64,000 nt of DNA from Octopus sinensis (GCF_006345805.1 NC_043014.1:47058001-47122000), one strand, 5' to 3'. Counted from the first letter of the stretch, positions 1,170-59,630 are shown. Notes: generated by a model not told the origin, from the sequence alone. Made by a program: numbers and translations.

Positions 1170-1585
1170 TCTTTTACTCTTTTACTTGTTTCAGTCATTT
1201 GACTGCGGCCATGTTGGAGCACCGCCTTTAGTCGAGCAAATCGACCCCGGGACTTATTCTTTTGTAAACCCAGTACTTATTCTATCGGTCTCTTTTGCCG
1301 AACCGCTAAGTTACGGGGACGTAAACACACCAGCATCGGTTGTCAAGCAATGCTAGGGGGACAAACACAAACACACACACACATACACATACATATACAT
1401 ACATATATATATACATATATACGACGGGTTTCTTTTCAGTTTCCGTCTACCAAATCCACTCACAAGGCTTTGGTCAGCCCGAGTCAGCTATAGTAGAAGA
1501 CACTTGCCCAAGGTGCCACGCAGTGGGACTGAACCTGGAACCATGTGGTTGGTAAACAAGCTACTTACCACACAGCCACTCCTGC
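1170..1585 (-). mobile_element. tRNA-derived CORE-type SINE, family A. Other copies: 11447-11856(-), 28637-29015(+), 30780-31160(-), 31688-32075(-), 32582-32966(-), 33476-34055(-), 34362-34752(-), 35805-36000(+), 43235-43625(-), 62027-62410(+), 63668-63900(-), plus fragments
   Basis: Head GCAGGAGTGGCTGTGTGGTAAG...GGTTCAGTCCCAC (A/B-box-like); CORE-like CCTTGGGCAAGT; central (TA/CA)n; (GAGTAAAA)n tail. Resembles the described octopus OR-type SINEs. Confidence 0.88.
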
Positions 1586-1991
1586 ACCTATGTATGTATT
1601 TTGTTTATTTATTTACTGATTTCTTTTTCTGCCTGTTTTTACTCCTCTTTTTAACCATTTTCTTACTATTTACCTTAATAAATTATACTGTTTTTCACAA
1701 GACATATTTATTTATCGATTTATTATTATTATTACAGTATGTCTTCTCTATATGTTACTGATTTTCTTCTAAGTTTCTTGATAACATTCACTTTAAAATA
1801 TCGTCTTGTCGAGCAAGTCGATATTTTGGCCGACCCAAATCTCCCAAAATGTTTATAGATACCACAGGTAAGTAGAAGCAGTACTGTCAAATACGTGAGT
1901 TTTATCAATGGGCATTCTTTCGATATAACTCGATTTAAATCAAAACATTTCACTTGGGGTATTTCCATGGGTTGTGGAGTATAGATATAAC

Positions 1992-2391
1992 GGCAACCTT
2001 TCGTCTCTAGTAGACCTTTCCGTCGATTTCCGTAAAAATTTTTTTTTTTTTTTTACATATGGGCTTGCGGGAACTTTTGAAGTAATGAGAGCGAAAGAGA
2101 CTAAGAGAAAGCGATTGTATGACAAGGGAAATTCTTTTGAAGTTACCGTGCATGTGAAGCATTGATGTACATGTGTGTGTGTTTGATGGGGTGTGGGAGA
2201 CAGACAGTATGTTGTGTAAGTGAAGTGCTTCTGTTAGTGTGTGTGAAAGAAAGAGATAACTGAAAATTTTTACTCGGTGTATGTGTATATGTATGTATAT
2301 TACTTCAAAAGTTCCCGCAAGCCCATATGTAAAAAAAAAAAATTTTTTTACTGAAATCGACGGAAAGGTCTACTAGAGACGAAAGATCGCC
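1992..2391. mobile_element. Merlin-like MITE family M1, copy 1 (nested in an older foldback element at ~1905-2580)
   Basis: TIR GGC(A/G)A(C/T)CTTTCGTCTCTAGTAGACCTTTCCGTCG; exact 8-bp TSD GATATAAC (1984-1991 / 2392-2399). Confidence 0.82.
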
Positions 2392-3859
2392 GATATAACG
2401 AAATTATGCCAGCAAAGTAAGCCTTGCATATTTTGTTCTTACCTGTTTCATGTGTGTAGGTAAAATCTGCAAATTTCCAATCAGGAATCAGAATCGAACT
2501 GTCGTTTGCTTCCACGGAAATACCCGAAGTGAAATGTTTTGATTTTGTCGAGTAATATCGAAAGAATGCCTATCAATGGTACATCTAGGTAGACTTGGAG
2601 GATCTTTTCGGTTTGAACGGCAGTTTTTTCTAGCGGTGTCATATGAAATTGTCACCCATAATTAAGACCCTAGTATCAATCTATTGCATTTCAATCTGTT
2701 TTAGGGTTAGGGGTGGGGGGAAGGGTATCTTTTTTTTCTTCACAAATGTAAATAAACCCAATCTGTTTCTTAAACGAGGGACATATTCATACGGCACAGA
2801 ATGTTTTCACCTCAATAGACGTCATTGATTGGTTGAAATTGCAGAAATTGAAGAAATAAAACAACAAATATCTTACAAACTATAGAATTTTCTCAATAAA
2901 GCCAAGAGAAAAAGATGTTTTATAAACACATTCTACCAGTATACGAAGTTTAAAATTTTTTAGTTACCTACAAATTATGTTAAAAACTGCCGTTCAAACC
3001 GAAAAGATCCTAATTTTTCATATCAGTAATGTTCAGTTGATCCATATAAACATTAGATTACTTTCGTTGGTCGCTACCGAATATCCATCTAGATTTCTAA
3101 AGCTGGTATCAATAAATTCTAATTAGCTGGTGGTTATTTACAGGAACATAAAAACACAAAATATTTCGTGACTTGAAAAAAATAAACATCAACATTTTCT
3201 GTTGTGTCAGAAATACGAAAGAATGTAAACACAAATCAAAAGACCATATTAAACATTATTTCCTACACACACACGAAGAGAAAAAAAGATTACTTCATAT
3301 GTACTGAAATGTATAAATAGTTATTGAATAATAAAACGATGTATAATACCTGATATGTGTCAACATGATGCTTATAAAGGGTGCAACATGTAAAATTCTG
3401 CGGCATCGCAGGAAAGCAGCAGATCTGTAAAGAAATATGGCGATGGCGTTAGAAGAAGGGAGGTTATTCTAGCTTTAGCGTCAGTCAGTGTTACACCAGA
3501 GAAGTGATTCGAGAAGCAACTGAAGAGAAAGCTCTTGTTTATAATTATAAATATGAAGTGATGAAGTTATTTACGAAATTATTTGTGATTTGACTCAAAG
3601 AAATATTTTTCTACAATTAGAAAATGGCGGTAACAGAGAGGCAAGGGAGGTAATTCTGGACGTGTGTTTCTCACTTTGATGATTCTAGCAGACAACACAC
3701 AAATTTGGTATTCCCTGATGTTAAAAATCAATCGATTCTCAGTTTAAGCAGAAAAATAAATATACAGTGAAACTTTTTCTACAATTTTGAAGCTTTATAC
3801 GCCGTATATAATTAGATCGTTTCAAACGAATCTAATAAGGCGTTGCTATGCAACTCTAT

Positions 3860-5528: not shown

Positions 5529-5605
<77 letters not shown>

Positions 5606-5608
<3 letters not shown>

Positions 5609-5807
5609 TGGTTTTCAACCAAGGTTCCGCCAGTACAGTCCAGGGGTTCCACCAAGAAGTTACAAAACTGCTCAAATCGGCAGTAATTTTTAAGTCTCCT
5701 GTGCAGATATGTGTGCATAAAACTATTAAATTATTGCACAGGGGTTCCTCGAGCCAGTGGAATGTTTCCTTGGGGTTCCGCTCCAGCAAAAAGTTTGAAA
5801 AGCACTG
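5606..5807. mobile_element. hAT (Charlie-like) MITE
   Basis: TIRs CAGTGGTTTTCAA / TTGAAAAGCACTG, inserted in a TA/TCTA repeat. Confidence 0.7.
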
Positions 5808-5822
5808 ATCTATCTATCTATC

Positions 5823-5858
<36 letters not shown>

Positions 5859-6125
5859 ATAATATATATATATATACTTTATTTTAAGCAGCAGAAAATT
5901 CAACAAAATCTGTTACTCTGAGTTTCTCGTTGCCGTTCATCAGAATATTTATTGGCCTGCTCGCTTAGCCAGCGCGGTGGCGTCATTTGAAGGCTAAAAC
6001 AATGCGAAGCGCATTGTGACCAGCGATGTGTAGCAACATCTGATTGCCTGGTCGATCACGGTGTATATGTGTGTGTGTGTGTGTGAATATATAAATACAT
6101 ATATATATATGTGTGTGTGTGTGTG

Positions 6126-6160
<35 letters not shown>

Positions 6161-6200
6161 GTATATATATATATTTATATGTATATATATGTGTATATAT

Positions 6201-6256
<56 letters not shown>

Positions 6257-6288
6257 TATATTATATAATATATATATATATATATATA

Positions 6289-6590
6289 TGAATAAATGGA
6301 GTTTAACGCAGGTGTAATCAAATATTTTTACTTTCGACACATGTTTCGAAAATTCCACTGATACTATTCAAAAGAATAAATGGTATAAACAATGTGCAAT
6401 CTTCTCCCCAGGAAAGTGAAAAAAACGAAACTCGTCAATAAGACATTTTAGCAAAAAAAATTTTTTTTTTAAAAGAGAAGATTGCATTGTTTATTTATTC
6501 TTTTGAATAGTATCAGTGGAATTTTCGAAACATGTGTCGAAAGTAAAAATATTTGATTACACCTGCGTTGAATTCCTTTTATTTATTCAT
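6289..6590. repeat. Foldback/MITE-like element with ~95-bp inverted arms next to (TA)n
   Basis: AACGCAGGTGTAATCAAATATTTTTACTTTCGACACATGTTTCGAAAATTCCACTGATACTATTCAAAAGAATAAAT followed by its reverse complement. Confidence 0.85.
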
Positions 6591-6745
6591 ATATTATTCA
6601 AAATATTCAACGTAAACACGAAGTTTCTACCTTTATAAACAAGGAGTTACAACACATTTACTTGTGAGATTTTTGCTGCCCTGGTAACTATTTATTTATT
6701 TTTTCCGTGTTAATTGTTAACAAGGTAAAAATACACACATCTATT

Positions 6746-6792
<47 letters not shown>

Positions 6793-7080
6793 TCATCATC
6801 ATCATCATCATCGTTTAACGTCCGCTTTCCAGGCTAGCATGGGTTGGACGGTTCAACTGGGGTCTGGCAAGCTCGAAGGCTGCACCAGGCCAGTCAGATC
6901 TGGCAGTGTTTCTACAGCTGGATGCCCTTCCTAACGCCAACCACTCCGAGAGTGTAGTGGGTGATTTTATGTGCCTCCGACACAGGTGCCAGACGAGGCT
7001 GGCAGACGGCCACGCTCGGATGGTGTTTTTTATGTGCCACCGACACAGGTGCCAGACGAGGCTGATATATATATATATAT

Positions 7081-7285
7081 ATACCAAGTAAGGACTGAAC
7101 ACGAAAAGTGGACAGTCAACATGCTAGATATAGACGTCAAATCGCCATTCTCCACAAAAGATTATGTTCTCAAATCAAACTCAGCACATAATCTGAGAAC
7201 ATAATCTTTTGTGGAGAATGGCGATTTGACGTCTATATCTAGCATGTTGACTGTCCACTTTTCGTGTTCAGTCCTTAATTGGTAT
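7081..7285. repeat. Hairpin with 84-bp perfect arms (7089-7172 / 7194-7277) and a 21-nt loop, embedded in (TA)n
   Basis: Direct reverse-complement match of the arms. Confidence 0.92.
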
Positions 7286-7368
7286 ATATAAATATTTTAA
7301 TCTTCGGATTCTTTTTTTAATATGCTAGACCACTGGTTTTAATTGATAAATATTGATTTCTACCCTTA

Positions 7369-7457
<89 letters not shown>

Positions 7458-7874: not shown

Positions 7875-9074
7875 ATGAATCATATTTATTTGGAAGCTCT
7901 GATAAAAAATCGAGTGTTTCTCGTACGCAATATCGAATATTCGACTTTGAGAGATTTTCTCATACAGGAGAACGTGTTCCCGATGAGTCAAATTGAAGTA
8001 GTTGATTCCAAACTTCACAGAACTGCCCAGATTAGGGAATTAATTGATATACTTCCTCGTCGCTCTGACAAACAATTCGTACTATTCTTACAGTGTCTCT
8101 CTTACTCCGAACAGAAACACATCGCCGATAATATAGCGAAATGTGTCTACAAACTTATAGAAGCAAATAAACCCAAATTGAGTATAAATGAATATAAACG
8201 TATTAATGAAAGTATATCTAATTTGACACTGACAGAAGCTCCGAGTTATCCAACTGAAAACGTTGATGAGAACCATTATGAAATCGCTTTTTCGCCCCAA
8301 GAGGAAACTCAGTCTGAGAGCAGTTTCCTATTCGAAGAGAACGAACCCAGTTATGAAAATGGCGAGGACAGTAATCCAACGGTCAGTTATTTGTCGTATT
8401 ATAAAATGTCATCGGAACCAAAGGGTTTGTTTTTCATCATAAACAACGATACGTTCAAAGATTGCTCTTTAAACCGCAATGGATCTAAAAAAGATGTGAG
8501 TGATTTGATGACTTTATTCTCGGATTTAAATTTCGTTCGCGACAAAAAAGAAAATCTAAATGCTATGGATATGAAACTTGCTTTATGGGGATTTTCCCAG
8601 ATGACATTATTAGGAAAAGCTGATTGTTGCGTTGTTGTTCTCCTCACACATGGCAAAAACATAAATCAACTTTTAGGAGTTGACGGAAATGTCGTTCATC
8701 TAGACGACCTACTTGCTTACTTCAATTCCGAAAACTGTCCTGCTTTGGTTGGCAAACCTAAGTTATTCATTATACAGGCATGTCGAGATGATATTAAAAC
8801 GCAATCTTATCACCAAGCTGCTATTCGCTCCGATGTAGTCATCGCTTATTCAACATCACCAGGACATGTTTCCCATCGGGACCCTCAAGAAGGCTCTGTA
8901 TTCATCCAAGAAATTGTCAGTGTGTTCAGTGAGTGTTCTAAGCACATGTCTATTACAGATATGTTGATAAAAGTTAGAGGAAATATAAAACAGAAATATC
9001 CCAATGTATCGCAATACCCAATAACCGAGTTTGCCTTAGAAAAGAGTTGGTATTTGAACCCGACTCTCCATTGA
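7875..9074 (+). CDS. Intronless CARD-containing initiator-type caspase (CARD + acidic linker + p20/p10), 399 aa
   Basis: N-terminal ~90 aa is CARD-like (LIKNRVFLVRNIE...DFLIQENVF...QIRELIDILPRR...FVLFLQCL). The p20 has YKMSSEPKGLFFIINN, RNGSKKD, VVVLLTHG (His259, 8649-8651) and GKPKLFIIQACR (Cys303, 8781-8783). The p10 has SDVVIAYST, SHR...GSVFIQ and QYP. Open frame, no stops. Confidence 0.93.
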   Translation: MNHIYLEALIKNRVFLVRNIEYSTLRDFLIQENVFPMSQIEVVDSKLHRTAQIRELIDILPRRSDKQFVLFLQCLSYSEQKHIADNIAKCVYKLIEANKPKLSINEYKRINESISNLTLTEAPSYPTENVDENHYEIAFSPQEETQSESSFLFEENEPSYENGEDSNPTVSYLSYYKMSSEPKGLFFIINNDTFKDCSLNRNGSKKDVSDLMTLFSDLNFVRDKKENLNAMDMKLALWGFSQMTLLGKADCCVVVLLTHGKNINQLLGVDGNVVHLDDLLAYFNSENCPALVGKPKLFIIQACRDDIKTQSYHQAAIRSDVVIAYSTSPGHVSHRDPQEGSVFIQEIVSVFSECSKHMSITDMLIKVRGNIKQKYPNVSQYPITEFALEKSWYLNPTLH

Positions 9075-9137: not shown

Positions 9138-9205
<68 letters not shown>

Positions 9206-9878
9206 ATGTGTGTGTGGTTGTAAAATTGATGAACTGAATACAATTTTTTTTTCTTGGATAATCTATGAATACCCATATTTGTACAACACAAGTGCGCAAA
9301 AGTTTTTGGAAAATTCCAAAAGATATATTTTAATAAGAAAAACAAAATGCTGTTATTTGGTGTGCTGGAACCAGAACTCCATTATTTATTATTTACCTTT
9401 TTTTTCTTTAATTTGTAAACCGAAATATAATAATTATACAGGCTAAGAATGTCTAATATATTTGGTTATGGTATGAATACGGTGTAACTGACGGCTAGTG
9501 AGTGGCACCAGTTCTTGTAAGTAACTTTATCCCAACTTTCATGCCAGGCAGACAAGTATTATTTACATTTTTCACGTCTTGTTGGATTCTACGAAATGAA
9601 GATCAGTTGTACAGTCCTGGTTGGCTGTTCTTGGATAGGTGCACCACCAATTAATGACTTAACAGGTTGCCTTGCAACACATAATTAATCATCATCACCA
9701 ATATGTCGGATTCCGATTTTACCACATACACACATTTTCAATTTCTTTTACTCACAATGACACACAGACACCCTTTTTCTTTTTATCGCAATATTGAAAA
9801 AAAAAATGGAGGTTGTGATATCCTAAACTTTCAGTTTTTAAAGTCCATTGTCCACTTTCATTTTCCACTTAATTTTTC

Positions 9879-10283
9879 GGCGATCTTTCGTCTCTAGTAG
9901 ACCTTTCCGTCGATTTCCATAAAAAAAAATTTTTTTTTTTATATATGGGCTTGCGGGAACTTTTGAAGTAATATACATACATATACACATACGCCGAGTA
10001 AAAAATTTCAGTTATCTCTCTCTGTCTCTTCACACACACTAACAGAAGCACTTCATTTACACAACATACTGTCTGTCTCCCACACCACATCAAACACACA
10101 CACACATGTACATCAATGCTTCACATGCACGGTAACTTCAAAAGAACTTCCCTCGTCATACAATCGCTTTCTCTTAGTCTCTTTCGCTCTCATTACTTCA
10201 AAAGTTCCCGCAAGCCCATATGTAAAAAAAAAAATTTTATTACGGAAATCGACGGAAAGGTCTACTAGAGACGAAAGATTGCC
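9879..10283. mobile_element. Merlin-like MITE family M1, copy 2 (opposite orientation)
   Basis: Same TIRs; exact 8-bp TSD AATTTTTC (9871-9878 / 10284-10291). Confidence 0.82.
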
Positions 10284-11652
10284 AATTTTTCTATTGTTAA
10301 CAGGGATTGGTTTATTTTTCTGTTCTGTTCGATTCTTTTTTTTTGTTGTTTTTGTTTTATATACTACACCTCTGTTCAATGACACATCAATAATGCATCA
10401 ATACTTGTAGTGTAAGTATTCCAATTGAATTTGATCAATGAAACAGCCTGCTTATGAAATTAATGTGCGAGTGGCTGAGCACTACAGATATGAGCACATA
10501 TAATATAGATCTCCAGGAGATTCAGTATGACTCAGATTGGGACTCAGGTTGACCCTTTGAATTACAGGTGAAACTCAGTTTTGCCAGCTGAGTAGACTGG
10601 AGCAACATGAAATGAAGTACCTTGCTCAATCCTGACCAGTGGCAGCTCGTAGATAAAATTAGTAAAGCTTACTGCTTCAGAAATTTTTTAGCCATATTTT
10701 TTAATATTGTGTAAAAGGAAACAAACATATAAAAAGAATATTTATACATAAACTTGATTGGTTCGCATTTTAGCCACTGCTGGGTAGTGTGTTTAATTGC
10801 TTTACTGAATACTGCTGCGAACTCACCCTTATTTTTCAAAAATCCCTCCTAAATCACAAAAGAAGGTGGGAAAATCTGCCCTATTTTTCAAATCCTGGCA
10901 GCGACAATGTAGCTGGAAGCAGGATAATAAACTAAGTCTACACTTTATCATGTTCAAGAATATAAACACGCTTTTGAACACAACACACACAATCATAAAG
11001 AAACACAACCTTTCACCAGCACATCGGGGTCGGCACTGCATGAACCAGTGTGCTCCCTCTTCCTAGCGTGCAGCTTCCTATCTTGGATATGCGAGCATAT
11101 GCACACGTGGTGTTTTCAGACACCACATTGCTAGAACTGCGAAAGGCACAGTTTATACAAGGATTTTTGTATTTTTTTTTTCATAAACTAGGGGTTGGCT
11201 ACTGGCATTGAGGGTTATATAATGTACAAGTATAAAAATAGAATTAGGGGGTTCTGCAGTTCCTGTACATGAGTTGCCGCTGATCCTCACCTTACACCCT
11301 TATCACTGAGCCACACACTCTATAACTAACACATCTTTCAGTTACTGACCTGCAAATGCACAAGCTGGGTCTTTAAAATCTCTGATCTTGAAATACTTCC
11401 TTAAATCAAGAATAAGGAGTATTTATAGCCTTTTCTCCCTTCATTTACTTACTCTTTACTCTTTTACTTGTTTCAGTCATTTGACTGCGGCCATGCTGGA
11501 GCACTGCCTCTAGTTAGGCAAATCGACCCCCGGGACTTATTCTTTGTAAACCCAGTACTTATTCTATCGGTCTCTTTTGCCGAACCGCTAAGTGACAGGG
11601 ACGTAAACACACCAGCATCGGTTGTCAAGCAATGCTAGGGAGACAAACACAG

Positions 11653-11688
<36 letters not shown>

Positions 11689-11949
11689 ATACATATATGC
11701 GACAGGCTTCTTTCAGTTTCCGTCTACCAAATCCACTCACAAGGCGTTGGTCGGCCCGGGGCTATAGCAGAAGACACTTGTCCAAGATGCCACGTAGTGG
11801 GACTGAACCCGGAACCATGTGGTTGGTAAGCAAGCTACTTACCACACAGCCACTCTTGTGCCCATTGTTGAAAAAAAATGTTGAACTCTATATTATATAT
11901 TTTTTAATGTAACAAATATTTTGTATATGACTGATATCGGTCACCTTAA

Positions 11950-12843
11950 CCCTTTAGCATTTAAACCAACCATATCCGGTCCAAATTTGCTACCCATTTT
12001 ATGTTTTGGCCAACCAGATCCTGCCTATCACACTTACCCTTCATTGCCGTTATAAAATATACAATCACCCCATCAAACTTTCAAAGCTATGATTCATCAT
12101 CATTGTTCAACCATGGTCGAGACAATGGAATTTACCATGCTACGCCAGACTTCACGGTCCATCATGGCATTACGGAGGTCCTGTTGCTGGATGCCTGTAT
12201 CCCTGGAGATTACATCAGGGTAGGAGAGTGTGCGCCCTCTGGTATTGCGAGTAGATGGCTTCCAGAGGAGAAGAGTAGAAATTACCTCTTTTTCAGCTCT
12301 ACAACGATGTCCAGCAAACTGAACTCTCCTACCTTTCACAAGAGATGACACAGGTGGTAGTTTCCCCATATATTTGCATTTTGTATGTAATGTATGATTA
12401 ATTAAAAACAATGGCACCTGTGTCGGTGGCACATAAAAAACACCATCCGAGCGTGGCCGTCTGCCAGCCTCGTCTGGTACTTGTGTCGGTGGCACATAAA
12501 AAAACACCATCCGAGCGTGGCCGTCTGCCAGCCTCGTCTGGTACTTGTGTCGGTGGCACATAAAAAAACACCATCCGAGCGTGGCCGTCTGCCAGCCTCG
12601 TCTGGCACCTGTGTCGGTGGCACATAAAATCACCCACTACACTCTCGGAGTGGTTGGCATTAAGAAGGGCATCCAGCTGTAGAAACACTGCCAGATCTGA
12701 CTGGCCTGGTGCAGCTCCTGGCTCCCCAGACCCCGGTCGAACCGTCCAACCCGTGCTAGCGCGGAAAACAGACGTTAAACGATGATGATGATGAATGAAT
12801 GGAAAAGCATTACATTTGACAGAATAATTTGAATGCTAAAGGG
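11950..12843. mobile_element. piggyBac-like MITE (second family; related copy 42234-42453) hosting a nested RTE fragment and a family-B retroposon
   Basis: TTAA|CCCTTTAGCATT...AATGCTAAAGGG|TTAA termini. Confidence 0.72.
12088..12369 (-). mobile_element. 3' fragment of an RTE-clade LINE
   Basis: RRVQFAGH...RGR...DTG...AMMDREVWR, the typical RTE C-terminus, followed by a GAT-repeat tail. Confidence 0.8.
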
Positions 12844-23089: not shown

Positions 23090-23482
23090 GGCAATCTTTC
23101 GTCTCTAGTAGACCTTTCCGTCGATTTCCGTAAAAATTTTTTTTTTTTTTCACATATGGGCTTGCGGGAACTTTTGAAGTAATGAGAGCGAAAGAGACTA
23201 AGAGAAAGCGATTGTATGACGAGGGAAGTTCTTTTGAAGTTACCGTGCATGTGAAGCATTGATGTACATGTGTGTGTGTGTTTGATGGGGTGTGGGAGAC
23301 AGACAGTATGTTGTGTAAGTGAAGTGCTTCTGTTAGTGTGTGTGTGAAGAGACAGAGAGAGAGTAATGTGTCTCTTTCGCTCTCGTTACTTCAAAAGTTC
23401 CCGCAAGCCCATATGTAAAAGAAAAAAAAAAAATTTTTTTACGGAAATCGACGGAAAGGTCTATTAGAGACGAAAGATCGCC
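23090..23482. mobile_element. Merlin-like MITE family M1, copy 3, ~370 bp upstream of the TPM gene ATG
   Basis: Same TIRs and internal sequence; flanked by a 12/13-matching direct repeat TTTATAATTGT(C/T)C. Confidence 0.8.
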
Positions 23483-23852
23483 TTTATAATTGTTCTAATG
23501 TCATAATAAAACCGAGCGGGGGGAAAAAAAAAAAAAAAGTTAGTTGTAAAAAGTTTTCTCGTTATAAACGAGAGATGAAGGTGGGCGAAGGAAGTAATTG
23601 CAGAGAGGAAACACCATGTATGGCAACATGTGTTTAGTTGTTGCCTGACTAGTTGTGCTGGCTCACTCACTGCTGGACCAGAAACCACATATACACACTC
23701 TCTCTCTCCTCTATTTATTTCTCCCACACACAGAAAACAATAACACTCCTTACAGCCTACATTTTTCTCTCTCTAAACAATAAACTAGACATTTTCGTAT
23801 CTCCTCTACCTTGGATTTGTGTTTGTAACCTTGTGACAGAAGGAAAAGAGCC

Positions 23853-24599
23853 ATGCCACACTCCACGATGCTGCTGGCCCATCTCGGAATCTACCTGATC
23901 CTGCTTCCTACATTCTTATACGCAGACATCCCAGTTTGGCGAGCGGACAACTACCCTCACCCGAGAAATCAATATGTCTTGTGTAAACAAAACAAACCAG
24001 AATGGTTGTGTGATCCGGACGGTCTTTTGGACAACAACGCAAAGGACATTCTTAATTTGGTGCTGGAAGAAATGAACGTTAAGTATACGTTGTGCCCTTG
24101 CAGTGCCTGGGAGTGTGAGAGCAACTCTGGTGGCTACTATACTTCGGTTATTCTGGCCAAGAAGATCGAGACGGGCACCAACACCAGCCAAGCTGCGCTT
24201 CTGAATAATGCCATTGGTTTCGTGTCTGAGCTCGACAAACGTTGGTCGTTCAAAGAAGAGCGATGCGAAGAAGGAATCATCTTGTTCTATTCCCGGGACG
24301 ACAACACTTTACTGACCTACAGTGGTAAAACGGCACGCAAGGTCCTTACCCCGGAACTGATCCGTGAAATTACCGAAAAGGCGGGCCAACATTTCCTCCC
24401 CGATGAGAATATTTCTGTGGGTTTGCTGAAAATGGTCGGAGACTATCGTCAGGTGTTGAATAACCATTATGTACCACAATCGAAACACCTTGGAGGTGAA
24501 GAATTAATTGGTTCTACCATCAGACCTCTGCCTTACATCTTTCTCCACCTGTTCTTACTCGTCCTTTCTGTTACCCTCTTCTCCTTCCTCGGTAACTAA
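23853..24599 (+). CDS. TPM (DUF477)-domain protein, MOLO-1 (modulator of levamisole receptor-1)-like; signal peptide and probable GPI-anchor signal
   Basis: Hydrophobic N-terminus (MLLAHLGIYLILLPTFLYA); W..DNYPHP...C...WLCDPDGLL motif typical of metazoan MOLO-1-like TPM proteins; conserved-looking CEEGIILFYSRDD and TG..AR..LT segments; hydrophobic C-terminus ending at the stop with no cytoplasmic tail; AATAAA at ~24884. Confidence 0.8.
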   Translation: MPHSTMLLAHLGIYLILLPTFLYADIPVWRADNYPHPRNQYVLCKQNKPEWLCDPDGLLDNNAKDILNLVLEEMNVKYTLCPCSAWECESNSGGYYTSVILAKKIETGTNTSQAALLNNAIGFVSELDKRWSFKEERCEEGIILFYSRDDNTLLTYSGKTARKVLTPELIREITEKAGQHFLPDENISVGLLKMVGDYRQVLNNHYVPQSKHLGGEELIGSTIRPLPYIFLHLFLLVLSVTLFSFLGN

Positions 24600-28327: not shown

Positions 28328-31300
28328 CTTAGGTGCCTATGGGCTCATGACCAAATATAGACACCTTCTCACCCCGCTTGACCCAGTGGATGTGATAACT
28401 GGAAGACGAGGAGGCTGCACTGGACTGGTGCTCATTTCTAACTGATGAGCGTGAAACACTGTGATGAAGCCTCTTGCTCAAGGATACAGTGAACTGGAAC
28501 TAAACTCACAACCTAATATTGAGGAGCTATAAAGGCTTAAATTACCGGACCATCATCCTTTTTATGTCTGCTTTCTCGTGCTGGTATGAGTTAGACAAGA
28601 CTTATTAAGGTACTGTATTTTCTGGCGAACAAGTCAACAGGAGTGGCTGTGTGGTAAGTAGCTTGCTAACCAACCACATGGTTCCGGGTTCAGTCCCACT
28701 GCGTGGCATCTTGGGCAAGTGTCTTCTGCTATAGCCCCGGGCCGACCAATGCCTTCTGAGTGGATTTGGTAGACAGAAACTGAAAGAAGCCTGTCGCATA
28801 TATGTATATATGTGTGTCTGTGTTTGTCCCCCTAGCATTGCTTGACAACCGATGCTGGTGTGTTTACGTCCCCGTCACTTAGCAGTTCGGCAAAAGAGAC
28901 TGATAGAATAAGTACTGGGCTTACAAAGAATAAGTCCCGGGGTCGATTTGCTCGACTAAAGGCAGTGCTCCAGCATGGCCGCAGTCAAATGACTGAAACA
29001 AGTAAAAGAGTAAAGAGTATGATATATAGTGTAAACATGTAGTGTAAACATTGAAACATTGTCACTATCTTTCCAAATCCTGTTGCATTTCACATGGAAG
29101 GGTCCTCCAAAGTCGTTTTGGTGTATTAGTCAACCTACCTTTTTTTTTCACTGTAAATTTTGATCCGAAAAATTCAACTTTTGTGCTGGAAAATATCATG
29201 CCTTTCTACAGCTGAATGCCTTTCTGTCAGCAGTCTTTGTTCTTCAAGTACAATGTTTTTATTCCTCTGGTGATGACAGGGATGGTGGTGCTTATAGGTT
29301 GAAACTGATGTAATAATCACTGAAATGCCAGTTTTTTTTTGTGTACTGGTGAATGTAAATAATTTCTTTTATTCTTTTACTTGTTTCAGTCATTTGACTG
29401 CAGGTATGTTGGGACACTGCCTTGAAAGGTTTTTAGTCAGAAAAACTGACCCCTAGACTTATTTTTTTAAGCCTAGTACTTATTCTCTATCAGTCTCTTT
29501 TGCTGAACAACTAAATTATGGGGTGATCAAGTCGTGGGAGGGGACAAACACAGACACAAAGACACGTGCACACACACATATATATACACATACACACAAC
29601 TGGCTTCTTTCAGTTTCCTGCAACCAAATCCACTCACAAGGTTTTGGTCAACCTGAGGCTATAGAAGAAGACTCTTGCCCATGGTACCACGGAGCAGAAC
29701 TGAACTCAGAGCCATGCGGTTGGGAAGCAAGCTTCTTGCCACACAGTCACTGATTTTATTCAAATGGTGTTAATAACGATACGTAGAAGCTATATCACAC
29801 ACACACACACATGTATAATGATTTGAAATTTTGGATTCTGAAACAGCAATTTTAAGGGAAGGGGTAAGTCGATTACAACAACCCCAGTATACAACTGGTA
29901 CTTATTTTATTAACCCTGAAAGGATAAAAAGTAAAGACAACCTCAACAGAATTTGAACTTGGAACAATTCTGCTAGCTTGCTACCTTATGTTGTAATATA
30001 ATAATAGCCAATATAAAAGTTGGTTGGTTGGTTGATTTCTCCAGTCACACTTTGCATCATATAGATTGGGGAATAGAGAGAGAGAGAGAGTAAAAGAAAG
30101 ATACTGAATTAAAAGGTACAGAATGAGTGCACATAGTAAGCTTGGTGACTGGAAATGAGTAAAAGAATACTCAACACACACACATTCAGTAAAAGAGAAA
30201 GAATCAGAGATAGAAACATTGGAGGAAGAGAGGGAGTAAATTATAGTTATGAGAGGAGTTTACAAATGAGAAATGTTTTATTTAATTCTATTTTAAAAGT
30301 AATAAATATCTTTTCTTTTGAAAATTAGTATTTTTTTCATCATTTTGTATAAGCACCAAGAAATTTGTTGAAAGTTAAATTACAATTATTGTATGACTGC
30401 CATATTTCCTGATGTTACCCATAGTGGCAAAAGTATACTTCCAAAATTACACAACATATAACTGGTAACACGCTAGTATGTATATCATCATCATTATCAT
30501 TTAACATCCGTTTTTCCGTGCTGGCATGAGTTGGACAATTTGACAGGAGCTGGCAAGCCAGAAGACTACACCTCGTTTCACCATCTCTTTTGGTATGGTT
30601 TCTACAGCGGGATGCCCTTCCTAATGACAACCACCTTAGAGTTGACAGTGCTTTTTACGTAGCACCATCACTGGTGAGGTCTGTTTTGGCATGGTTTTTT
30701 TATGGCTGGATGCTCTTCCTAATGCAAACCACTTTACACACACACATATCTAATGTAACATATATATTCTCTTTTATCTCTTTTACTTGTTTCAGTCATT
30801 TGACTGCGGCCATGTTGGAGCACCGCCTTTAGTCAAGCAAATCGACCCCAGGACTTATTCTTTGTAAGCCTAGTACTTATCCTATCGGTCTCTTTTGCCG
30901 AACCGCTAAGTAACGGGGACGTAAACACACCAGCATCGGTTGTCAAGCAATGTTGGGGAGACAAACACACACACACACATATTACATATACATATATATA
31001 TATATATATGACGAGCTTCTTTCAGTTTCTAACAAATCCACTCAGAAGGCTTTGGTCGGCCCGAGGCTATAGTAGAAGATACTTGCCCAAGGTGCCACGC
31101 AGTGGGACTGAACCTGGAACTGTGTGGTTGGTAAGCAAGCTACTTACCACACAGCCACTCCTTACTACATGTATACATATATATCCATTGCCAACCTGGA
31201 AAACAAACATTAAATGTGATGATATATAAAAGGCACAAGCACTTTTGACACAGGCATATACGCATAATGAACTTTTAGTTTCCGCCTACCAAATTTGCTC

Positions 31301-33640: not shown

Positions 33641-34794
33641 AGCAATGCTAGGGGGACAAACACAGACACACAAACACACACACATCATCATCATCATCAT
33701 CATCGTTTAGCATCCGCTTTCCATGATGGCATGGGTTGGACGGTTCAACTGGGGTTTGGGAAGCCAGAAGGCTGCACCAGGCCCAGTCTAATCTGGCAAT
33801 GTTTCTATGGCTGGATGCCCTTCCTAATGCCATATATATATATATATATGTATGTATCATCATCATCATCATATATATATATATACATATATATACATAT
33901 ATATGACAGACTTCTTTCAGTTTACCAAATCCACTCACAAGGCATTGGTCGGCCTGGGGCTATAGCAGAAGACACTTGCCCAAGATGCCACGCATTGGAA
34001 CTGAACCCGGAATCATGTGGTTGGTTAGCAAGCTACTTACCACACAGCCACTCCTGCTTAATTTTATTTGTTTACACCAAGTTATGTAGATTTACGGCAA
34101 AGCAATAGCAGTGGTAGTGGTCAGTCCAGTGTCAGCTTTAATTATTCATGCTTTGCATAAATATTGTATTTAGGATCAGGGATTTAAGAAAGACCTGACT
34201 GCTATTTCTTGCAGACTGAATGACTATACAGCTTCTCCCTGCTTCCTCATAGTATGGTACAAGTTGGCTAAATGTCATATTTGAAATTAGTGTACTGTTA
34301 TTTGTATAGGTTTGAAGGGTTAACATAGAGGTTGGCCTTTGGTGTGTCTGTGACTCCATTCTCTCTTTTACTTGTTTCAGTCATTTGACTGCGGCCATGC
34401 CGGAGCACCACCTTTAGTCGAGCAAATCAACCCCGGGACTTATTCTTTGTAAGCCCAGTACTTATTCTATCGGTCTCTTTTTGCCGAACCGCTAAGTGAC
34501 AGGGACATAAACACATCAGCATCGGTTGTCAAGCAATGCTAGGGGGACAAACACAGACACACAAATATACACACACATACATATATATATACGATGGGCT
34601 TCTTTCAGTTTCCATCTACCAAATCCACTTACAAGGCTTTGATTGGCCTGAGGCTATTGTAGAAGACACTTGCCCAAGGTGCCACGCAGTGGGACTGAAC
34701 CCGGAACCATGTGGTTGGTAAGCAAGCTACTTACCACACAGCCACTCCTGCGCCCATTGTGTGTAAATATTTCACTTCACAGCCATTTGTGCTA

Positions 34795-35700
34795 ATCATC
34801 ATCATTATCGTTTAACATCCACTTTCTATGCTGGCATGGGTTGGACGATTTGACTGAGGACATTACATTACACGTCCAGCGGAGCATACTGGCTTCATTC
34901 CTTGCAAGCTTACACATGTCCTCAGCAGTCACGGCCCATGTTTCACTGCCATGTCGCATGGCTGTTCGTACACATGCGTCATACAGTCTACCTTTTACTC
35001 TGAGCGAGAGGCCCTTTGTCACCAGCAGAGGTAGGAGCTCTCTGAACTTTGCCCAGGCTATTCTTATTCTAGCAGCTACATTTTCAGAGTACCCACCCCC
35101 GCTACTGACTTGGTCACCTAGGTAACAGAAGCTATCAACTACTTCTAGTTTTTCTCCCTGGAATGTGGCAGAAGTTGTTCTCTGCACATTTTCAGTGTTT
35201 ATTTCTCCTGAGCATCTGCCACATACAAAACTATCTTCCCAATTAGCCTTCCTTTGAGATTGCTGCACCTCTTGTGTCCATAGCTTACACTGGGTACATC
35301 TTATAGAGTTTCTACCTTCGCTTTTTCTACAGATCGAACAGGGCCATCTAACTGAAGGTATTTGTGGTTTGTCTGCCTTCCTACTTATTAGGACTTTGGT
35401 TTTAGCTAGGTTGACTCTAAGGTCCTTCGATTCTAATCCTTGCTTCCACACCTGAAACTTCTCCTCTAGTTCTGATAGTATCTCGGCAATTAGAGTAAGG
35501 TCATCAGCATAGAGGAGCTCCCAGGGGCATCCTGTCATTAATTCCTCTGTTATTGCCTGGAGGACTATGATAAATAGGAGGGGCCTGAGGACTGAACCTT
35601 GGTGGACTCCTACCTTTACCTCAAATTCTTCACTGTACTTGTTGCCAACCCTCACCTTACTGACAGCGTCCCTGTACATGGCTTGCACAGCTCTCACTAA
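34795..35700 (-). mobile_element. RTE-clade LINE fragment (RT C-terminal half + Cys-rich insert), internally deleted and joined to a (GAT)n-tailed 3' end
   Basis: GVHQGSVL.PLLF, LLYADD, NLAKTKV, CSIC...CTQC...CGRC, FCYLGD, RI..AWAKF, YGSETW-like RHGSETW; the last ~60 nt match the 3' end of retroposon family B. Confidence 0.92.
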
Positions 35701-36703
35701 TGTTTTTAAGAAAAGCGTGAATGACATTAATTCTATTTATTGCCTTTACGAATACACCCTAACATATCTTCTCTAATAAAATTTTGAATTTATCTCTGTG
35801 AGGCACAAGTGTGGCTGTGTGGTAAGAAGTTTCCTTCCCAACCACATGATTCCAGGTTCAGTTCTACTTTGTGGCACCTTGAGCAAGTGTCTTCTAGTAT
35901 AACACCAGGTCAACCAAAGCCTTGTGAGTGGATTTGGCAGGCAGAAACTGAAAGAAGCCCATTGTATGTATATATATATATGTGTGTGTGTGTATGTGTG
36001 CATGCGTGTTACTGTCTCATTGCCTAGATTTCACGTGATGGTTGTGACTGAATGTCACTATCATATAAGTGGTGCCCTTCATTTCCAATCTTCTGTGAAA
36101 ACATGTCTCTGGTCATGGGGAATTTTACCTTATTTGGAAACAGGTGAGGGTTGGTGTCAGGGAGAGCATCCAGCTATAGAAAATCTGCCTCAATAAATTT
36201 CATCTAATCCATGCAAGTATAGAAAGTTCAACATTAAATGATGATGATGATGATATTAAATGATAGGGTGGCGAGCTGGCAGAACTGTTAGCATGCCGGG
36301 TGAAATGCGTAGCCGTATTTCGTCTGCCATTACGTTCTGAGTTCAAATTCCGCCGAGGTCGACTTTGCCTTTCATCCTTTCGGGGTCGATAAATTAAGTA
36401 CCAGTTACGCACTGGGGTCGATGTAATCAACTTAATCCATTTATCACTCCTTGTTTGTCCCCTTGTGGGTAGTAAAGAAATAGATCTAAAGGAATTTTTA
36501 TTTGTGATATACCAGGAAGATGGCACCATCCGCATAGTAGTGATGTTAAATTGACTCCCAACCTCAGGTACCATGACATCTATTGTGTTGTCTCTTGCCC
36601 CACAACATTCCTTATATGATTAATTTCAGGGTTGTCTCCTATGTCTTTTTTTTTTTACGGTTGTTCTCATCATTGGAAATATAACTCTAACTTAAAATTT
36701 CTA

Positions 36704-38532: not shown

Positions 38533-39599
38533 CCATACAAGCCTTTGTGTATGTATTTATATACACATACACACACGTACAAGCATACCCACTCATTCTT
38601 CTCTATGAACTCTTTCATTGATGCCTGTGTCAGCTATTTAAAACATTTCCTTCCTTTCAAAATGATGGAAATAATTTTTTAAATATTTTATTGTTTCGCT
38701 CATATTCTCTCTTTCCGCTCCAACGAGTTTCTGGAATTGACACAAAATTTTTACTGAATTTACTTTTAAACAATCCAAACATGTGATTCCAACATCAGAT
38801 AAAACATCTTTTTTTTTAGTACAATTATTTCATTTATTTAGCATTTTTGTCAGAGGATGAACTGGTATGTGTATGGGGGCAGGGTCTCTGTAATTGGCTG
38901 GGGGAAGTTATCCCAAGACCAGCGAGCTGGCAGAAACGTTAGCACGCCAGGCGAAATGCTTAGCGGTATTTCGTCTGCTGTTACGTTCTGAGTTCAAATT
39001 CCGCCGAAGTTGACTTCGCCTTTCATCCTTTCAGGGTCAATAAATTGAGTACCTATTTCTTTACTACCCACAAGGGGCTAAACACAGAGAGGACAGACAA
39101 AGGGATTAAGTCGATTACATCGACCCTAGTGCGTAACTGGTACTCAATTTATCGACCCCGAAAGGATAAAAGGCAAAGTCGACCTTGGCGGAATTTGAAC
39201 TCAGAACGTAACGGCAGACAAAATACAGCTACGCATTTCGCCCGGCGTGCTAACGTTTCTGCCAGCTTGCCGCCTTAAATTGAGTACCAGTTACACACTG
39301 CGGGAGGGGAGGTCGATGTAATCAACTTAATCCCTTTGTCTGTCCTTGTTTGTCCCTTCTATGTTTAGCTCCTTCTGGGCAATAAAGAAACAAGAAATAA
39401 GACCAGAGACTAACCTGAATGTTTGCAACAGAGCAGGTTCTACTAAAGCAGTGGTCCCCAACCATTTTTTTACTTATGAACTCCTTTGGTTCCTATTTTA
39501 CTCTGCTGCGGGGCTACTCAAAACGGTGGTCTGCAGAGTGATGCCAGTCTGCGAACCATCAGCTGCCAGTACGCGGCGAGTTTCCAGAAAAGAAAGAAA

Positions 39600-40007
39600 C
39601 ATTATAAAATGTGATTTTGGAATACCTACCTCACGACTTGTTTGCCACACTGATTTTCTTGGACTTTGGTGATTTGTTTCCAGCACTCCTTCTTGCTTTG
39701 TTGGGGTTGTCAATGTTTGTGGTCTTCTGGAATGCTTCTCATGGACATTCTGAACAGTTTCATCGACTTCAAACTCATCTCTCATTTGAGTGATGGTAAG
39801 TTGCGTTGGTGGATCTATTTGAAACTCCCTCCTAAACTGTCTTTGCACTTCAACTGCGTTTTCCCACTTCCAGAAGCATTTTAGAATGAATTTCCTTTGT
39901 TCAAAGCTTAGTCTGACTGCCATCATTAATTCCAGTGGGTTTCATCTGGAAAGTAAAAACATCTATTAAGTTACCAGCTGCTAAATTGTGTATACATTTT
40001 TTTTTGG

Positions 40008-59303: not shown

Positions 59304-59630
59304 CTATCCGCTCAGTGGAAGTCGACTCTCGGTCACTCGTTGGATCAGTGTCCTCCAGTCAGTTCTATCCTGGGCCGCTTCCTTCAGATTGGCCATGTCC
59401 ATTCCGGTATTACTCCTGGTGGTGTCAAGCCAGCGGGTTCTTGGTCGGCCTCTTCCTCTCTTGCCACTGACCATTCCGAGCATGATGTCCTTCTCCAGGG
59501 ATTTTCTCCGCATAATATGACCGAAATATGCCAATCTATGCTTGGTGATCCTAGCTTCTAGCGACATTTTCGGCCTTATCTGCTTAAGAACTTCTCCATT
59601 GGCGAGCCTCGCTGTCCATGGAATCCGCAT
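59304..59630 (-). mobile_element. 3' fragment of a BovB-like RTE LINE
   Basis: RIPWTAR..N.EVL...SLE..I.K.RL.YFGHIMRR.SLEKDIMLG.V.GKRGRGRPR.RWLD...DR..WR...VT.SR closely follows the Bov-B ORF C-terminus. Confidence 0.88.

What the first reader, a model, noticed from the sequence alone, without database searches (positions are those of the whole stretch)
8775..8850. Caspase with a QACRD active site and an abnormally short linker lacking a cleavable Asp: possible single-chain, dimerisation-only caspase
Seen: catalytic His259/Cys303 and the Asp-binding S1 residues (R of LNRNGS, Q of QAC, R of SHR) are intact. The pentapeptide is QACRD rather than QACxG. Only 16 residues (RDDIKTQSYHQAAIRS) separate Cys from the first p10 strand, versus 28 in human caspase-3, and the only Asps in that stretch sit 2-3 residues after the catalytic Cys. 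Established: classical caspases mature by cleavage at linker Asps, while MALT1 paracaspase works uncleaved. Inference: this enzyme may act as an uncleaved, CARD-scaffold-activated protease, or be a regulatory decoy. This would be an atypical caspase subtype.
Basis: partly seen in the sequence, partly recalled or inferred. Interest (0 to 1): 0.72.

Follow-up and report, generated by a model that had tools for sequence, protein, structure and literature searches.

The report
Octopus CARD-caspase with a very short linker
This is a real, conserved octopus cell-death protease (a CARD-caspase) whose loop joining its two halves has shrunk to 16 residues and has no normal cut site, so it probably works as one uncut chain; that would be an unusual variant of a well-known enzyme family, but nobody has tested it at the bench.

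Summary
Window 7875..9074 (+), from Octopus sinensis chromosome CM016876.1, is one uninterrupted 399-aa ORF with a CARD and a caspase domain. The catalytic and Asp-binding residues R201, H259, Q301, C303 and R335 are intact. The pentapeptide is QACRD. Exactly 16 residues lie between Cys303 and Asp320, against 28 in caspase-3, 52 in caspase-9 and a median of 42 in 139 other caspases.

The feature is not an assembly error or a missing exon. O. vulgaris, O. bimaculoides, a third octopod and Argonauta all carry the same single-exon gene with the same 16-residue linker. dN/dS is about 0.36 (0.2 against Argonauta). The sister clade has 41-52-residue linkers, so the deletion arose on the octopod stem.

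Two corrections apply:
- QACRD is not special. 13 of 149 unrelated caspases lack the fifth-position Gly, and an oyster QACRS caspase is active.
- Linker position +7 is Glu in the other three Octopus-type sequences and Asp in Argonauta, and Gln only in O. sinensis. A non-canonical cut there, like DRONC's TQTE, is not excluded.

My best reading, at moderate confidence, is a CARD-recruited single-chain protease. A locked regulator is the main rival. It is a new variant of a known kind.

The parts
7875..9074 (+). Complete single-exon CDS (399 aa plus stop) of the CARD-caspase. RefSeq/GenBank orthologues are named 'caspase-2' or 'caspase-3-like'.
   Evidence: ORF list. Exact protein found on O. sinensis CM016876.1. 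Orthologues at 98%, 82%, 74% and 50% identity.
7893..8135 (+). CARD prodomain, residues 7-87
   Evidence: Pfam PF00619, E 4.2e-10. Weak best PDB sequence matches to the CARDs of caspase-9, NOD1, RAIDD and Apaf-1, E 0.02-0.3. AF2 models it as a helical bundle with pLDDT 83-91.
8136..8396 (+). Acidic, disordered CARD-to-p20 spacer (about residues 88-174). Contains ENVD134 and NGED167.
   Evidence: AF2 pLDDT below 50 for residues 119-172. Fastest-evolving long segment, dN/dS 0.4-0.8.
8430..9044 (+). Caspase (Peptidase_C14) domain, residues 186-390
   Evidence: Pfam PF00656, E 1.3e-47. PDB sequence hits to caspase-9, -2, CED-3, -7 and -3. AF2 model matches caspase-7 and caspase-9 structures at target-normalised TM 0.8-0.89.
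8475..8477 (+). R201, the S1 Arg (caspase-1 Arg179 equivalent)
   Evidence: Aligned to 'RTGS' of caspase-9. Invariant in 16 sequences.
8649..8651 (+). Catalytic His259 (THG)
   Evidence: Aligned to 'SHG' of caspase-9. Invariant.
8775..8789 (+). Active-site pentapeptide QACRD (Q301, catalytic C303, D305 in place of Gly)
   Evidence: Sequence and codons. C303 and R304 are invariant.
8784..8831 (+). Intersubunit linker R304-S319, 16 residues (RDDIKTQSYHQAAIRS)
   Evidence: Length identical in 5 octopod taxa while the sequence changes. AF2 pLDDT below 50 for residues 308-317. Falls in the extreme low tail of 148 caspases.
8802..8804 (+). Codon CAA = Q310, linker position +7. It is GAA (Glu) in three other Octopus-type sequences and GAT (Asp) in Argonauta.
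   Evidence: Codon alignment.
8832..8879 (+). Start of the p10 part: D320-VVIAYSTSPGHVSH-R335 (first p10 strand, S1 Ser333 and Arg335)
   Evidence: Aligned to 'SDIFVSYSTFPGFVSWR' of caspase-9. S333 and R335 are invariant. AF2 strand at 321-325.

Best explanation
**What it is.** The locus is the Octopus sinensis copy of an octopod-specific, single-exon gene for a CARD-prodomain caspase. It belongs to the molluscan 'caspase-2-like' lineage.

**What happened.** On the stem of the octopods the intersubunit linker was cut down from about 41-52 residues to exactly 16. That removed the segment (…MRL(M/E)S(L/F)DLSS…) that the long-linker sister clade keeps. What remains is the part next to the catalytic Cys and the part entering the first p10 strand.

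**How it most likely works (inferred).**
- The enzyme is still a working Asp-specific protease.
- It is recruited through its CARD to an oligomeric platform and switched on by proximity or dimerisation.
- It stays a single polypeptide instead of separating into p20 and p10.
- By analogy with caspase-9, it would then lack the cleavage-dependent release 'timer' and the IAP-binding new N-terminus that linker cleavage creates.

**Shown:** gene, domains, residues, linker length, conservation and selection.
**Inferred:** activity, dimerisation and the absence of processing.
For: - **Real gene.** It is a CARD plus caspase with a complete catalytic dyad and S1 triad.
- **Catalytic residues held.** R201, H259, G260, C303, S333 and R335 are invariant in 16 aligned relatives. 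They persist although Octopus and Argonauta are only about 50% identical.
- **Purifying selection.** dN/dS is 0.36 among Octopus species (Fisher P 1e-7 to 3e-4) and about 0.2 against Argonauta. It is 0.19 in the CARD and 0.16-0.41 in the p10 part.
- **Length is constrained, sequence is not.** The linker is fixed at 16 residues in five taxa while its sequence changes freely.
- **Derived state.** The octopod clade has 100% bootstrap support. It is sister to the long-linker clade at 99%.
- **No hidden exon.** The CDS is single-exon everywhere in the clade.
- **Fold.** AF2 gives a normal caspase fold with the linker as a short unstructured crossover.
- **Precedents.** MALT1 works with a 20-residue uncut connection. 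Procaspase-9 needs no linker cleavage (PMC5123071). Single-chain caspase-3 V266E is active (PMC2805924). A non-Gly fifth position is compatible with activity (QACRS oyster caspase, PMC11543851).
Against: - No biochemical or expression data exist for this protein.
- In effector caspases an intact short linker blocks the active site. The active conformation uses contacts between the linkers of the two monomers, Asp169 to Val189' (PMC2805924). A 16-residue linker may be too short to make them.
- An acidic residue followed by Ser or Thr is conserved at +7 in the other four octopod sequences. It could be a cut site.
- dN/dS of 0.36 is fairly relaxed for a core apoptotic protease.
- The CARD partner is unknown.
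Confidence: 0.45

Rival explanations
1. The enzyme is still processed, at a non-canonical site seven residues after the catalytic Cys. The candidate sites are ITPD|T in Argonauta and IKTE|S, ISKE|S and SQQE|S in other Octopus-type sequences. That would be a two-chain caspase with very short L2 and L2' loops. The Gln at this position in the O. sinensis reference would be a very recent loss, a polymorphism or a base error.
For: - Position +7 is D/E/E/E/Q and position +8 is T/S/S/S/S, in a linker that otherwise diverges freely.
- DRONC, also a CARD initiator, autoprocesses between its subunits after Glu352 in TQTE (PMC300883, PMC3252740).
- Other short-linker caspases keep an Asp, for example P0129 (18 residues, MELTD|T) and P0073 (15 residues, DYTD|Q).
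Against: - In 98 of 139 other caspases the first Asp at or beyond +4 lies at +4 to +8, with a median of +6.
- That is the position of caspase-3 Asp169, a structural loop-bundle residue and not the cut site (PMC2805924). The conserved acid may be that residue.
- To my recollection the shortest known L2 left after cleavage is about 12 residues.
- O. sinensis carries Gln with the rest of the gene intact.
Confidence: 0.22
2. The short uncleavable linker locks the protein in a zymogen-like, inactive or barely active state. It then acts mainly through its CARD as a regulator. It would compete for, or scaffold, an activation platform, in the way a catalytically inactive procaspase-9 acts as a dominant negative.
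For: - Uncleaved short linkers hold procaspase-3 and -7 inactive by occupying the dimer interface (PMC2805924).
- Catalytically inactive procaspase-9 is an effective dominant-negative (PMC5123071).
- The CARD is the most constrained part of the protein, dN/dS 0.11-0.21.
- Overall dN/dS is relaxed at 0.36.
Against: - All catalytic and S1 residues are retained in every octopod sequence since the deletion. Known caspase-like decoys such as cFLIP have lost them (my own knowledge).
- The p20 and p10 parts are also under purifying selection.
Confidence: 0.25
3. The feature is an artefact: an assembly or annotation error, a decaying retrocopy, or a private defect of one genome.
For: - The CDS is intronless, while the bivalve and gastropod relatives span 9-10 kb. 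That fits a retrocopy origin.
- TA microsatellites and repeats flank the gene.
Against: - The same ORF with the same linker length occurs in four independent genome assemblies plus Logan read-assembly contigs from several sequencing runs.
- There are no stops or frameshifts.
- dN is significantly below dS.
- Intronless structure is shared by the long-linker sister clade, so it long predates the deletion.
Confidence: 0.03

Closest known systems
Caspase-9 / caspase-2 / CED-3 class of CARD initiator caspases
   Same: - CARD followed by a caspase domain.
- Best PDB sequence matches are caspase-9 (1.8e-28), caspase-2 and CED-3.
- The end of the linker, 'IRSD', resembles caspase-9 'TPSD' and caspase-2 'TRSD'.
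- Procaspase-9 is active without linker cleavage (PMC5123071).
   Different: - The linker is 16 residues against 52 in caspase-9, with no Asp site.
- The pentapeptide is QACRD rather than QACGG or QACRG.
- Outside the linker the domain is about as long as caspase-3 or -7: the caspase-3 alignment is 12 residues shorter overall, which equals the linker difference.
Drosophila DRONC
   Same: It is a CARD initiator with an atypical active-site pentapeptide. It autoprocesses in the linker after Glu (TQTE352) rather than Asp (PMC300883, PMC3252740). This is a possible model for the Glu at +7 in other Octopus species.
   Different: DRONC has a long linker, with its cut site far from the catalytic Cys (my recollection). 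The octopus site would lie only 7 residues after the Cys, and in O. sinensis it is Gln.
MALT1 paracaspase
   Same: It has a caspase fold and is active as an uncut chain. It has a comparably short connection: 20 residues between the catalytic Cys and the 'NIVFGYAT' strand (sequence checked against PDB chains). It is activated by recruitment and dimerisation (established knowledge).
   Different: This protein is not a paracaspase. It keeps the Asp-binding Arg/Gln/Arg S1 residues and has a CARD, not the death domain and Ig domains of MALT1.
Molluscan caspases with variant linkers and pentapeptides (oyster CgCaspase-3/6/7 with QACRS; Euprymna scolopes EsCasp2_2X with QACRS)
   Same: - Molluscan caspase families vary in linker length and in the fifth pentapeptide residue.
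- The oyster QACRS enzyme is DEVDase-active (PMC11543851).
- Pentapeptide variants in squid initiators are tabulated in PMC9389742, which also used O. sinensis caspases.
   Different: The published variation is toward long linkers of 63-286 aa that inhibit cleavage activation. The octopod case is the opposite extreme. I found no description of it.
Procaspase-3 V266E (engineered single-chain active caspase)
   Same: It shows that an uncut caspase with a 28-residue linker can be active once the linker leaves the dimer interface, and that it then largely escapes XIAP (PMC2805924).
   Different: It is engineered, not natural. Its linker is 12 residues longer and was modelled as just long enough to form the loop bundle.

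Membership tests
Caspases (MEROPS C14A, Pfam PF00656) | Caspase fold with a His-Cys catalytic dyad in the (S/T)HG and QACxG contexts | tested here: met
   - Pfam E 1.3e-47.
- THG259 and QAC303 align to the caspase-9 dyad.
- The AF2 model matches caspase-7 and -9 structures at TM 0.8-0.89.
- The fifth pentapeptide residue is Asp rather than Gly. This deviation also occurs in 13 of 149 unrelated caspases.
Caspases (MEROPS C14A, Pfam PF00656) | Asp-specific S1 pocket: Arg179, Gln283 and Arg341 in caspase-1 numbering | tested here: met
   R201, Q301 and R335 align to these positions. R201 and R335 are invariant across 16 relatives. Specificity itself was not assayed.
Caspases (MEROPS C14A, Pfam PF00656) | Maturation by cleavage at Asp in the intersubunit linker into large and small subunits | tested here: not met
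   The 16-residue linker has Asp only at +2 and +3. Whether any cleavage occurs can only be settled experimentally. This feature is typical of the family, not strictly defining: procaspase-9 is active uncut (PMC5123071).
CARD initiator caspases (caspase-2/-9, CED-3, DRONC) | N-terminal CARD prodomain | tested here: met
   Pfam CARD E 4.2e-10 at residues 7-87. AF2 gives a helical bundle.
CARD initiator caspases (caspase-2/-9, CED-3, DRONC) | Recruitment to a defined adaptor platform (Apaf-1/CED-4/Dark or RAIDD-PIDD) and activation by induced proximity | not testable with these tools
   CARD matches to caspase-9, NOD1, RAIDD and Apaf-1 CARDs are all marginal, E 0.02-0.3, and do not discriminate.
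CARD initiator caspases (caspase-2/-9, CED-3, DRONC) | Phylogenetic placement with caspase-2/9-type sequences | tested here: inconclusive
   - The nearest named relatives are bivalve 'Caspase-2', amphioxus 'caspase-9-like', Ciona 'caspase-2-like' and nematode caspases.
- Other annotators call the relatives caspase-3-, -6- or -7-like.
- Bit scores to caspase-9, -2, -7 and -3 differ little, 103 to 83.
Paracaspases (MALT1-type) | Arg-specific acidic S1 pocket and a death-domain plus Ig-domain architecture | tested here: not met
   The S1 residues are the caspase Arg/Gln/Arg. The only prodomain found is a CARD. The resemblance is limited to the short uncut linker.
Catalytically dead caspase-like decoys (cFLIP-type) | Loss of the catalytic Cys and/or His | tested here: not met
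   H259 and C303 are present and invariant in all orthologues.

The most novel reading that the evidence does not exclude
Octopods have evolved a true caspase, Asp-specific and CARD-recruited, that is obligatorily single-chain. Its 16-residue linker makes the classical p20/p10 loop-bundle rearrangement impossible. The active site would then be organised by a paracaspase-like dimerisation mechanism without any cleavage. That would be a natural counterpart of the engineered uncleavable caspases. It would presumably be insensitive to IAP binding at a cleaved small-subunit N-terminus and would lack the apoptosome 'timer'.
Probability: 0.3. Interest if true: 0.65.

Novelty: new variant of a known kind. 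Interest (0 to 1): 0.42.

Why it matters
Whether cleavage of the intersubunit linker is needed for caspase activity has been argued case by case with engineered uncleavable mutants. A natural, conserved caspase whose linker is too short and too Asp-poor for normal processing would be an evolutionary experiment on that question.

There is a built-in control. The sister clade keeps a 41-52-residue linker in an otherwise orthologous, equally intronless gene. Nature also supplies point variants at linker position +7: Asp in Argonauta, Glu in O. vulgaris and Gln in O. sinensis.

It would also show how cephalopods wire their intrinsic or stress cell-death pathway, which is almost uncharacterised. 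If the protein turns out to be cut at +7 or to be a locked regulator, it remains a useful but modest addition to the known diversity of molluscan caspases.

Tried and rejected
- **Literature for QACRD, QACRN or QTCRN.** There were no relevant hits. The only QACRD and QACRN matches are in an unrelated synthetic-biology paper.
- **Supplementary tables of PMC11543851.** These would list octopus linker lengths, but they are not held.
- **Logan contig of P0003 (L005) as a transcript.** It is collinear with the genome for 270 nt upstream and about 790 nt downstream, carries a dispersed repeat and has no poly(A). It looks genomic, so it gives no expression evidence.
- **Assigning the CARD to an adaptor by sequence.** All matches were marginal.
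- **Profile-based homologue search to deepen the alignment.** It added only three sequences, so the AF2 alignment stayed shallow at 16 sequences. The linker conformation is low-confidence and should not be interpreted.
- **Tandem paralogues in the window.** None were found (tblastn).
- **A missing exon supplying the linker.** Rejected.
- **QACRD as a mark of a special subtype.** Rejected.
- **Enterobacter proteins in the 90% cluster of the O. vulgaris orthologue.** The cluster lists 48-51-aa Enterobacter 'hypothetical proteins'. Their sequences bear no resemblance to the caspase, so this is a clustering artefact and not horizontal transfer.
- **Taxon of the long-linker sister sequences (P0005-8, P0013).** 'Decapodiform cephalopod' is my inference from tree position and the shared intronless structure.

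Full report
**1. What is at the coordinates**

The window comes from Octopus sinensis assembly GCA_006345805.1, chromosome CM016876.1, near 47.06 Mb. The exact protein is found there.

Window 7875..9074 (+) is one uninterrupted 399-aa ORF. Pfam finds a CARD at residues 7-87 (E 4e-10) and a Peptidase_C14 caspase domain at 186-390 (E 1e-47). The best solved-structure sequence matches are:
- caspase-9 (1.8e-28)
- a caspase-2 construct
- CED-3
- caspase-7
- caspase-3

Those alignments place R201, H259, Q301, C303 and R335 on the S1 Arg, the catalytic His, the S1 Gln, the catalytic Cys and the S1 Arg.

The finding's interval 8775..8850 encodes QACRDDIKTQSYHQAAIRSDVVIAY. The pentapeptide is QACRD. 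The linker from R304 to S319 is 16 residues, and its only Asps are D305 and D306.

I checked it on a PDB chain. Caspase-9 has 52, because query residue 317 aligns to both chain position 161 and chain position 197.

An AlphaFold2 model from a 16-sequence alignment has mean pLDDT 77. The caspase core is at about 90, and the linker (308-317) and the CARD-to-p20 spacer (119-172) are below 50. The model matches caspase-7 and caspase-9 crystal structures at target-normalised TM 0.8-0.89. So the fold is ordinary, but the model says nothing reliable about the linker path.

**2. Is it more than chance or error?**

I scored every protein in a 1.84-billion-protein representative library. For the 158 proteins in hand I measured the distance between the catalytic Cys and the first p10 strand with two local-alignment anchors.

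| Measure, 139 caspases outside this clade | Value |
|---|---|
| Median linker | 42 residues |
| 5th percentile | 22 residues |
| Linkers of 20 residues or fewer | 5 |

Only two are shorter than 16:
- the degenerate second domain of a tandem caspase (P0075, DACRE, 11 residues)
- a 228-aa CARD-less caspase from an unidentified eukaryote (P0073, QACRD, 15 residues)

Only the Octopus-type sequences (P0001-P0003) and P0075 lack any Asp beyond +3.

Absence of Asp is partly a by-product of shortness. At the 9.7% Asp content of other linkers, P(no Asp in 13 residues) is about 0.27. The genuine anomaly is therefore the length.

QACRD itself is not remarkable:
- 13 of 149 unrelated caspases have a non-Gly fifth residue, including QACRD with long linkers in P0031 and P0071.
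- The squid Euprymna has QACRS and QACQP initiators (PMC9389742).
- An oyster QACRS caspase cleaves Ac-DEVD-pNA (PMC11543851).

**3. Conservation and history**

| Orthologue | Identity to window | Pentapeptide and start of linker |
|---|---|---|
| O. vulgaris | 98% | QACRDDIKTES |
| O. bimaculoides | 82% | QACRDEISKES |
| Unnamed Logan sequence P0003 | 74% | QACRDESQQES |
| Argonauta hians | 50% | QACRSNITPDT |

All four have exactly 16 linker residues.

The next relatives are P0005-P0008 and P0013, at about 32-41% identity and with no taxon name given. They have QACRN, QTCRN or QACRS and linkers of 41-52 residues, which contain a conserved …MRL(M/E)S(L/F)DLSS… segment.

In a neighbour-joining tree of the caspase domain:
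- the short-linker octopod clade has 100% bootstrap support;
- it joins the long-linker clade at 99%.

The deletion is therefore a derived character of the octopod stem. It has been retained since the Octopus-Argonauta split.

All these genes have a single coding exon. The closest named non-cephalopod relatives are Pinctada 'Caspase-2' and a Haliotis CARD-caspase, and they span 9.7 and 8.9 kb. This suggests an old retroposition or intron loss in the cephalopod lineage, which is my inference. It also rules out a hidden exon supplying the linker.

Nei-Gojobori estimates:

| Comparison or region | dN/dS |
|---|---|
| Among Octopus species | 0.36 (0.53 for O. bimaculoides vs P0003); dN < dS, Fisher P 1e-7 to 3e-4 |
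| Against Argonauta | about 0.2 |
| CARD | 0.11-0.21 |
| p10 part | 0.16-0.41 |
| Linker | above 1, on very few sites |

Linker length is constrained but its sequence is not. R201, H259, G260, C303, S333 and R335 are invariant in 16 relatives.

**4.

At linker position +7 the O. sinensis reference has CAA (Gln310). O. vulgaris, O. bimaculoides and P0003 have GAA (Glu), and Argonauta has GAT (Asp, in ITPD|T). The next residue is always Ser or Thr. Two readings are possible.

(a) It is a residual or non-canonical processing site. The CARD-caspase DRONC autoprocesses between its subunits after Glu352 in TQTE (PMC300883, PMC3252740).

(b) It is the counterpart of caspase-3 Asp169, at +6. That residue is not the cut site but the centre of the loop-bundle hydrogen bonds that stabilise the active site (PMC2805924). 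In support, 98 of 139 other caspases have their first Asp beyond +3 at +4 to +8, with a median of +6.

Either way, 'no cleavable acidic residue' is strictly true only for O. sinensis.

**5. How it most likely works**

Established background:
- Initiator procaspases gain activity on dimerisation, and cleavage mainly stabilises them.
- Procaspase-9 needs no linker cleavage. Its cleavage instead starts a release 'timer' and creates the XIAP-binding end (PMC5123071, PMC2805924).
- In procaspase-3 and -7 the intact linker sits in the dimer interface and blocks loop L3. An uncut caspase-3 can nevertheless be active if the linker is expelled, and its 28-residue linker was modelled as just long enough to form the loop bundle (PMC2805924).
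- MALT1 works uncut with 20 residues between the Cys and the equivalent strand (sequence verified).

By position along the linker (no residue alignment was made), the octopod linker looks like a caspase-3 linker lacking roughly residues 170-183. That segment holds the cut site and the first half of L2'.

My preferred reading, at confidence about 0.45, has three parts:
- The protein is a catalytically competent, CARD-recruited protease.
- It is activated by proximity or dimerisation.
- It stays one chain.

The retention of every catalytic and S1 residue under purifying selection is the main argument against a pure decoy.

| Rival | Confidence |
|---|---|
| Locked zymogen acting through its CARD as a regulator | about 0.25 |
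| Cleavage at +7 | about 0.22 |
| Artefact or pseudogene | about 0.03 |

None of these can be separated without bench work.

**6. Comparison with known families**

The protein is a member of the caspase family by fold, dyad and S1 pocket. It has the CARD-initiator architecture.
- It is not a paracaspase. It has the wrong S1 chemistry and the wrong prodomain, and shares only the short uncut connection.
- It is not a cFLIP-type dead homologue.
- Its assignment to caspase-2 versus caspase-9 versus a CARD-bearing caspase-3-like group is unresolved. Database names for the orthologues disagree (caspase-2, caspase-2-like, caspase-3-like), and the CARD matches are marginal.

**7. Novelty and verdict**

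The gene is already present as a predicted protein in public databases. Variation in molluscan caspase linkers and pentapeptides has been published, but in the direction of long linkers (PMC11543851). I found no description of this ultrashort, Asp-poor linker.

I rate it a new variant of a known kind. It is of moderate interest (0.42) and offers a clean natural comparison set for experiments.

Noticed in passing
window 8802..8804: O. sinensis has CAA (Gln310) where O. vulgaris, O. bimaculoides and P0003 have GAA (Glu) and Argonauta has GAT (Asp). This is a single G-to-C difference at the only conserved acidic position of the linker. It could be a fixed change, a polymorphism or a base error.
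   Followed up: partly
window 23853..24599 (+): A 248-aa single-exon ORF with an N-terminal hydrophobic leader and a C-terminal hydrophobic tail. It matches Pfam MOLO1 (modulator of levamisole receptor-1, E 2e-23) and weakly matches the TPM domain. It is probably a real neighbouring gene.
   Followed up: partly
window 34792..35727 (-), 39498..39926 (-), 12100..12633 (-), 59304..59798 (-): Transposon remnants. There is a reverse-transcriptase fragment (RVT_1, E 6e-12) and a DUF4817 helix-turn-helix ORF (E 4.5e-10). Two further ORFs resemble retroelement tails but have no Pfam match.
   Followed up: partly
window, for example 1520..1578, 11796..11852, 28644..28702, 31099..31157, 34686..34744, 62035..62091: A short dispersed, SINE-like repeat is present in many copies on both strands. 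It is shared with the O. bimaculoides, Argonauta and P0003 loci. A second repeat of about 400 bp occurs at about 1989..2393, 9879..10287 and 23090..23485.
   Followed up: no
window 5531..7457 and 9140..9207: Long (TA)n microsatellites flank the caspase gene on both sides, including one immediately after the stop codon.
   Followed up: no
L008:4001-4687 (ENA ERZ18545484, contig ptg000206l): P0073 is a 228-aa CARD-less caspase with QACRD and a 15-residue linker (RDYTDQALTGLECES), from an unidentified eukaryotic assembly. It lies next to a second Peptidase_C14 ORF and an ApoL-domain ORF. It branches just outside the cephalopod clade in the NJ tree. It may be an independent or related case of linker shortening.
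   Followed up: partly
L009 (Pinctada imbricata) and L010 (Haliotis cracherodii) versus the window, L002, L003, L004 and L007: The bivalve and gastropod CARD-caspase relatives span about 9-10 kb with introns. Every member of the cephalopod clade, short-linker or long-linker, has an intronless CDS. This suggests an old retroposition or wholesale intron loss.
   Followed up: partly
protein cluster of P0001 (database, not the window): The 90%-identity cluster of the O. vulgaris orthologue also lists four 48-51-aa Enterobacter 'hypothetical proteins' whose sequences are unrelated to the caspase. This is a clustering artefact and not evidence of transfer or contamination.
   Followed up: yes
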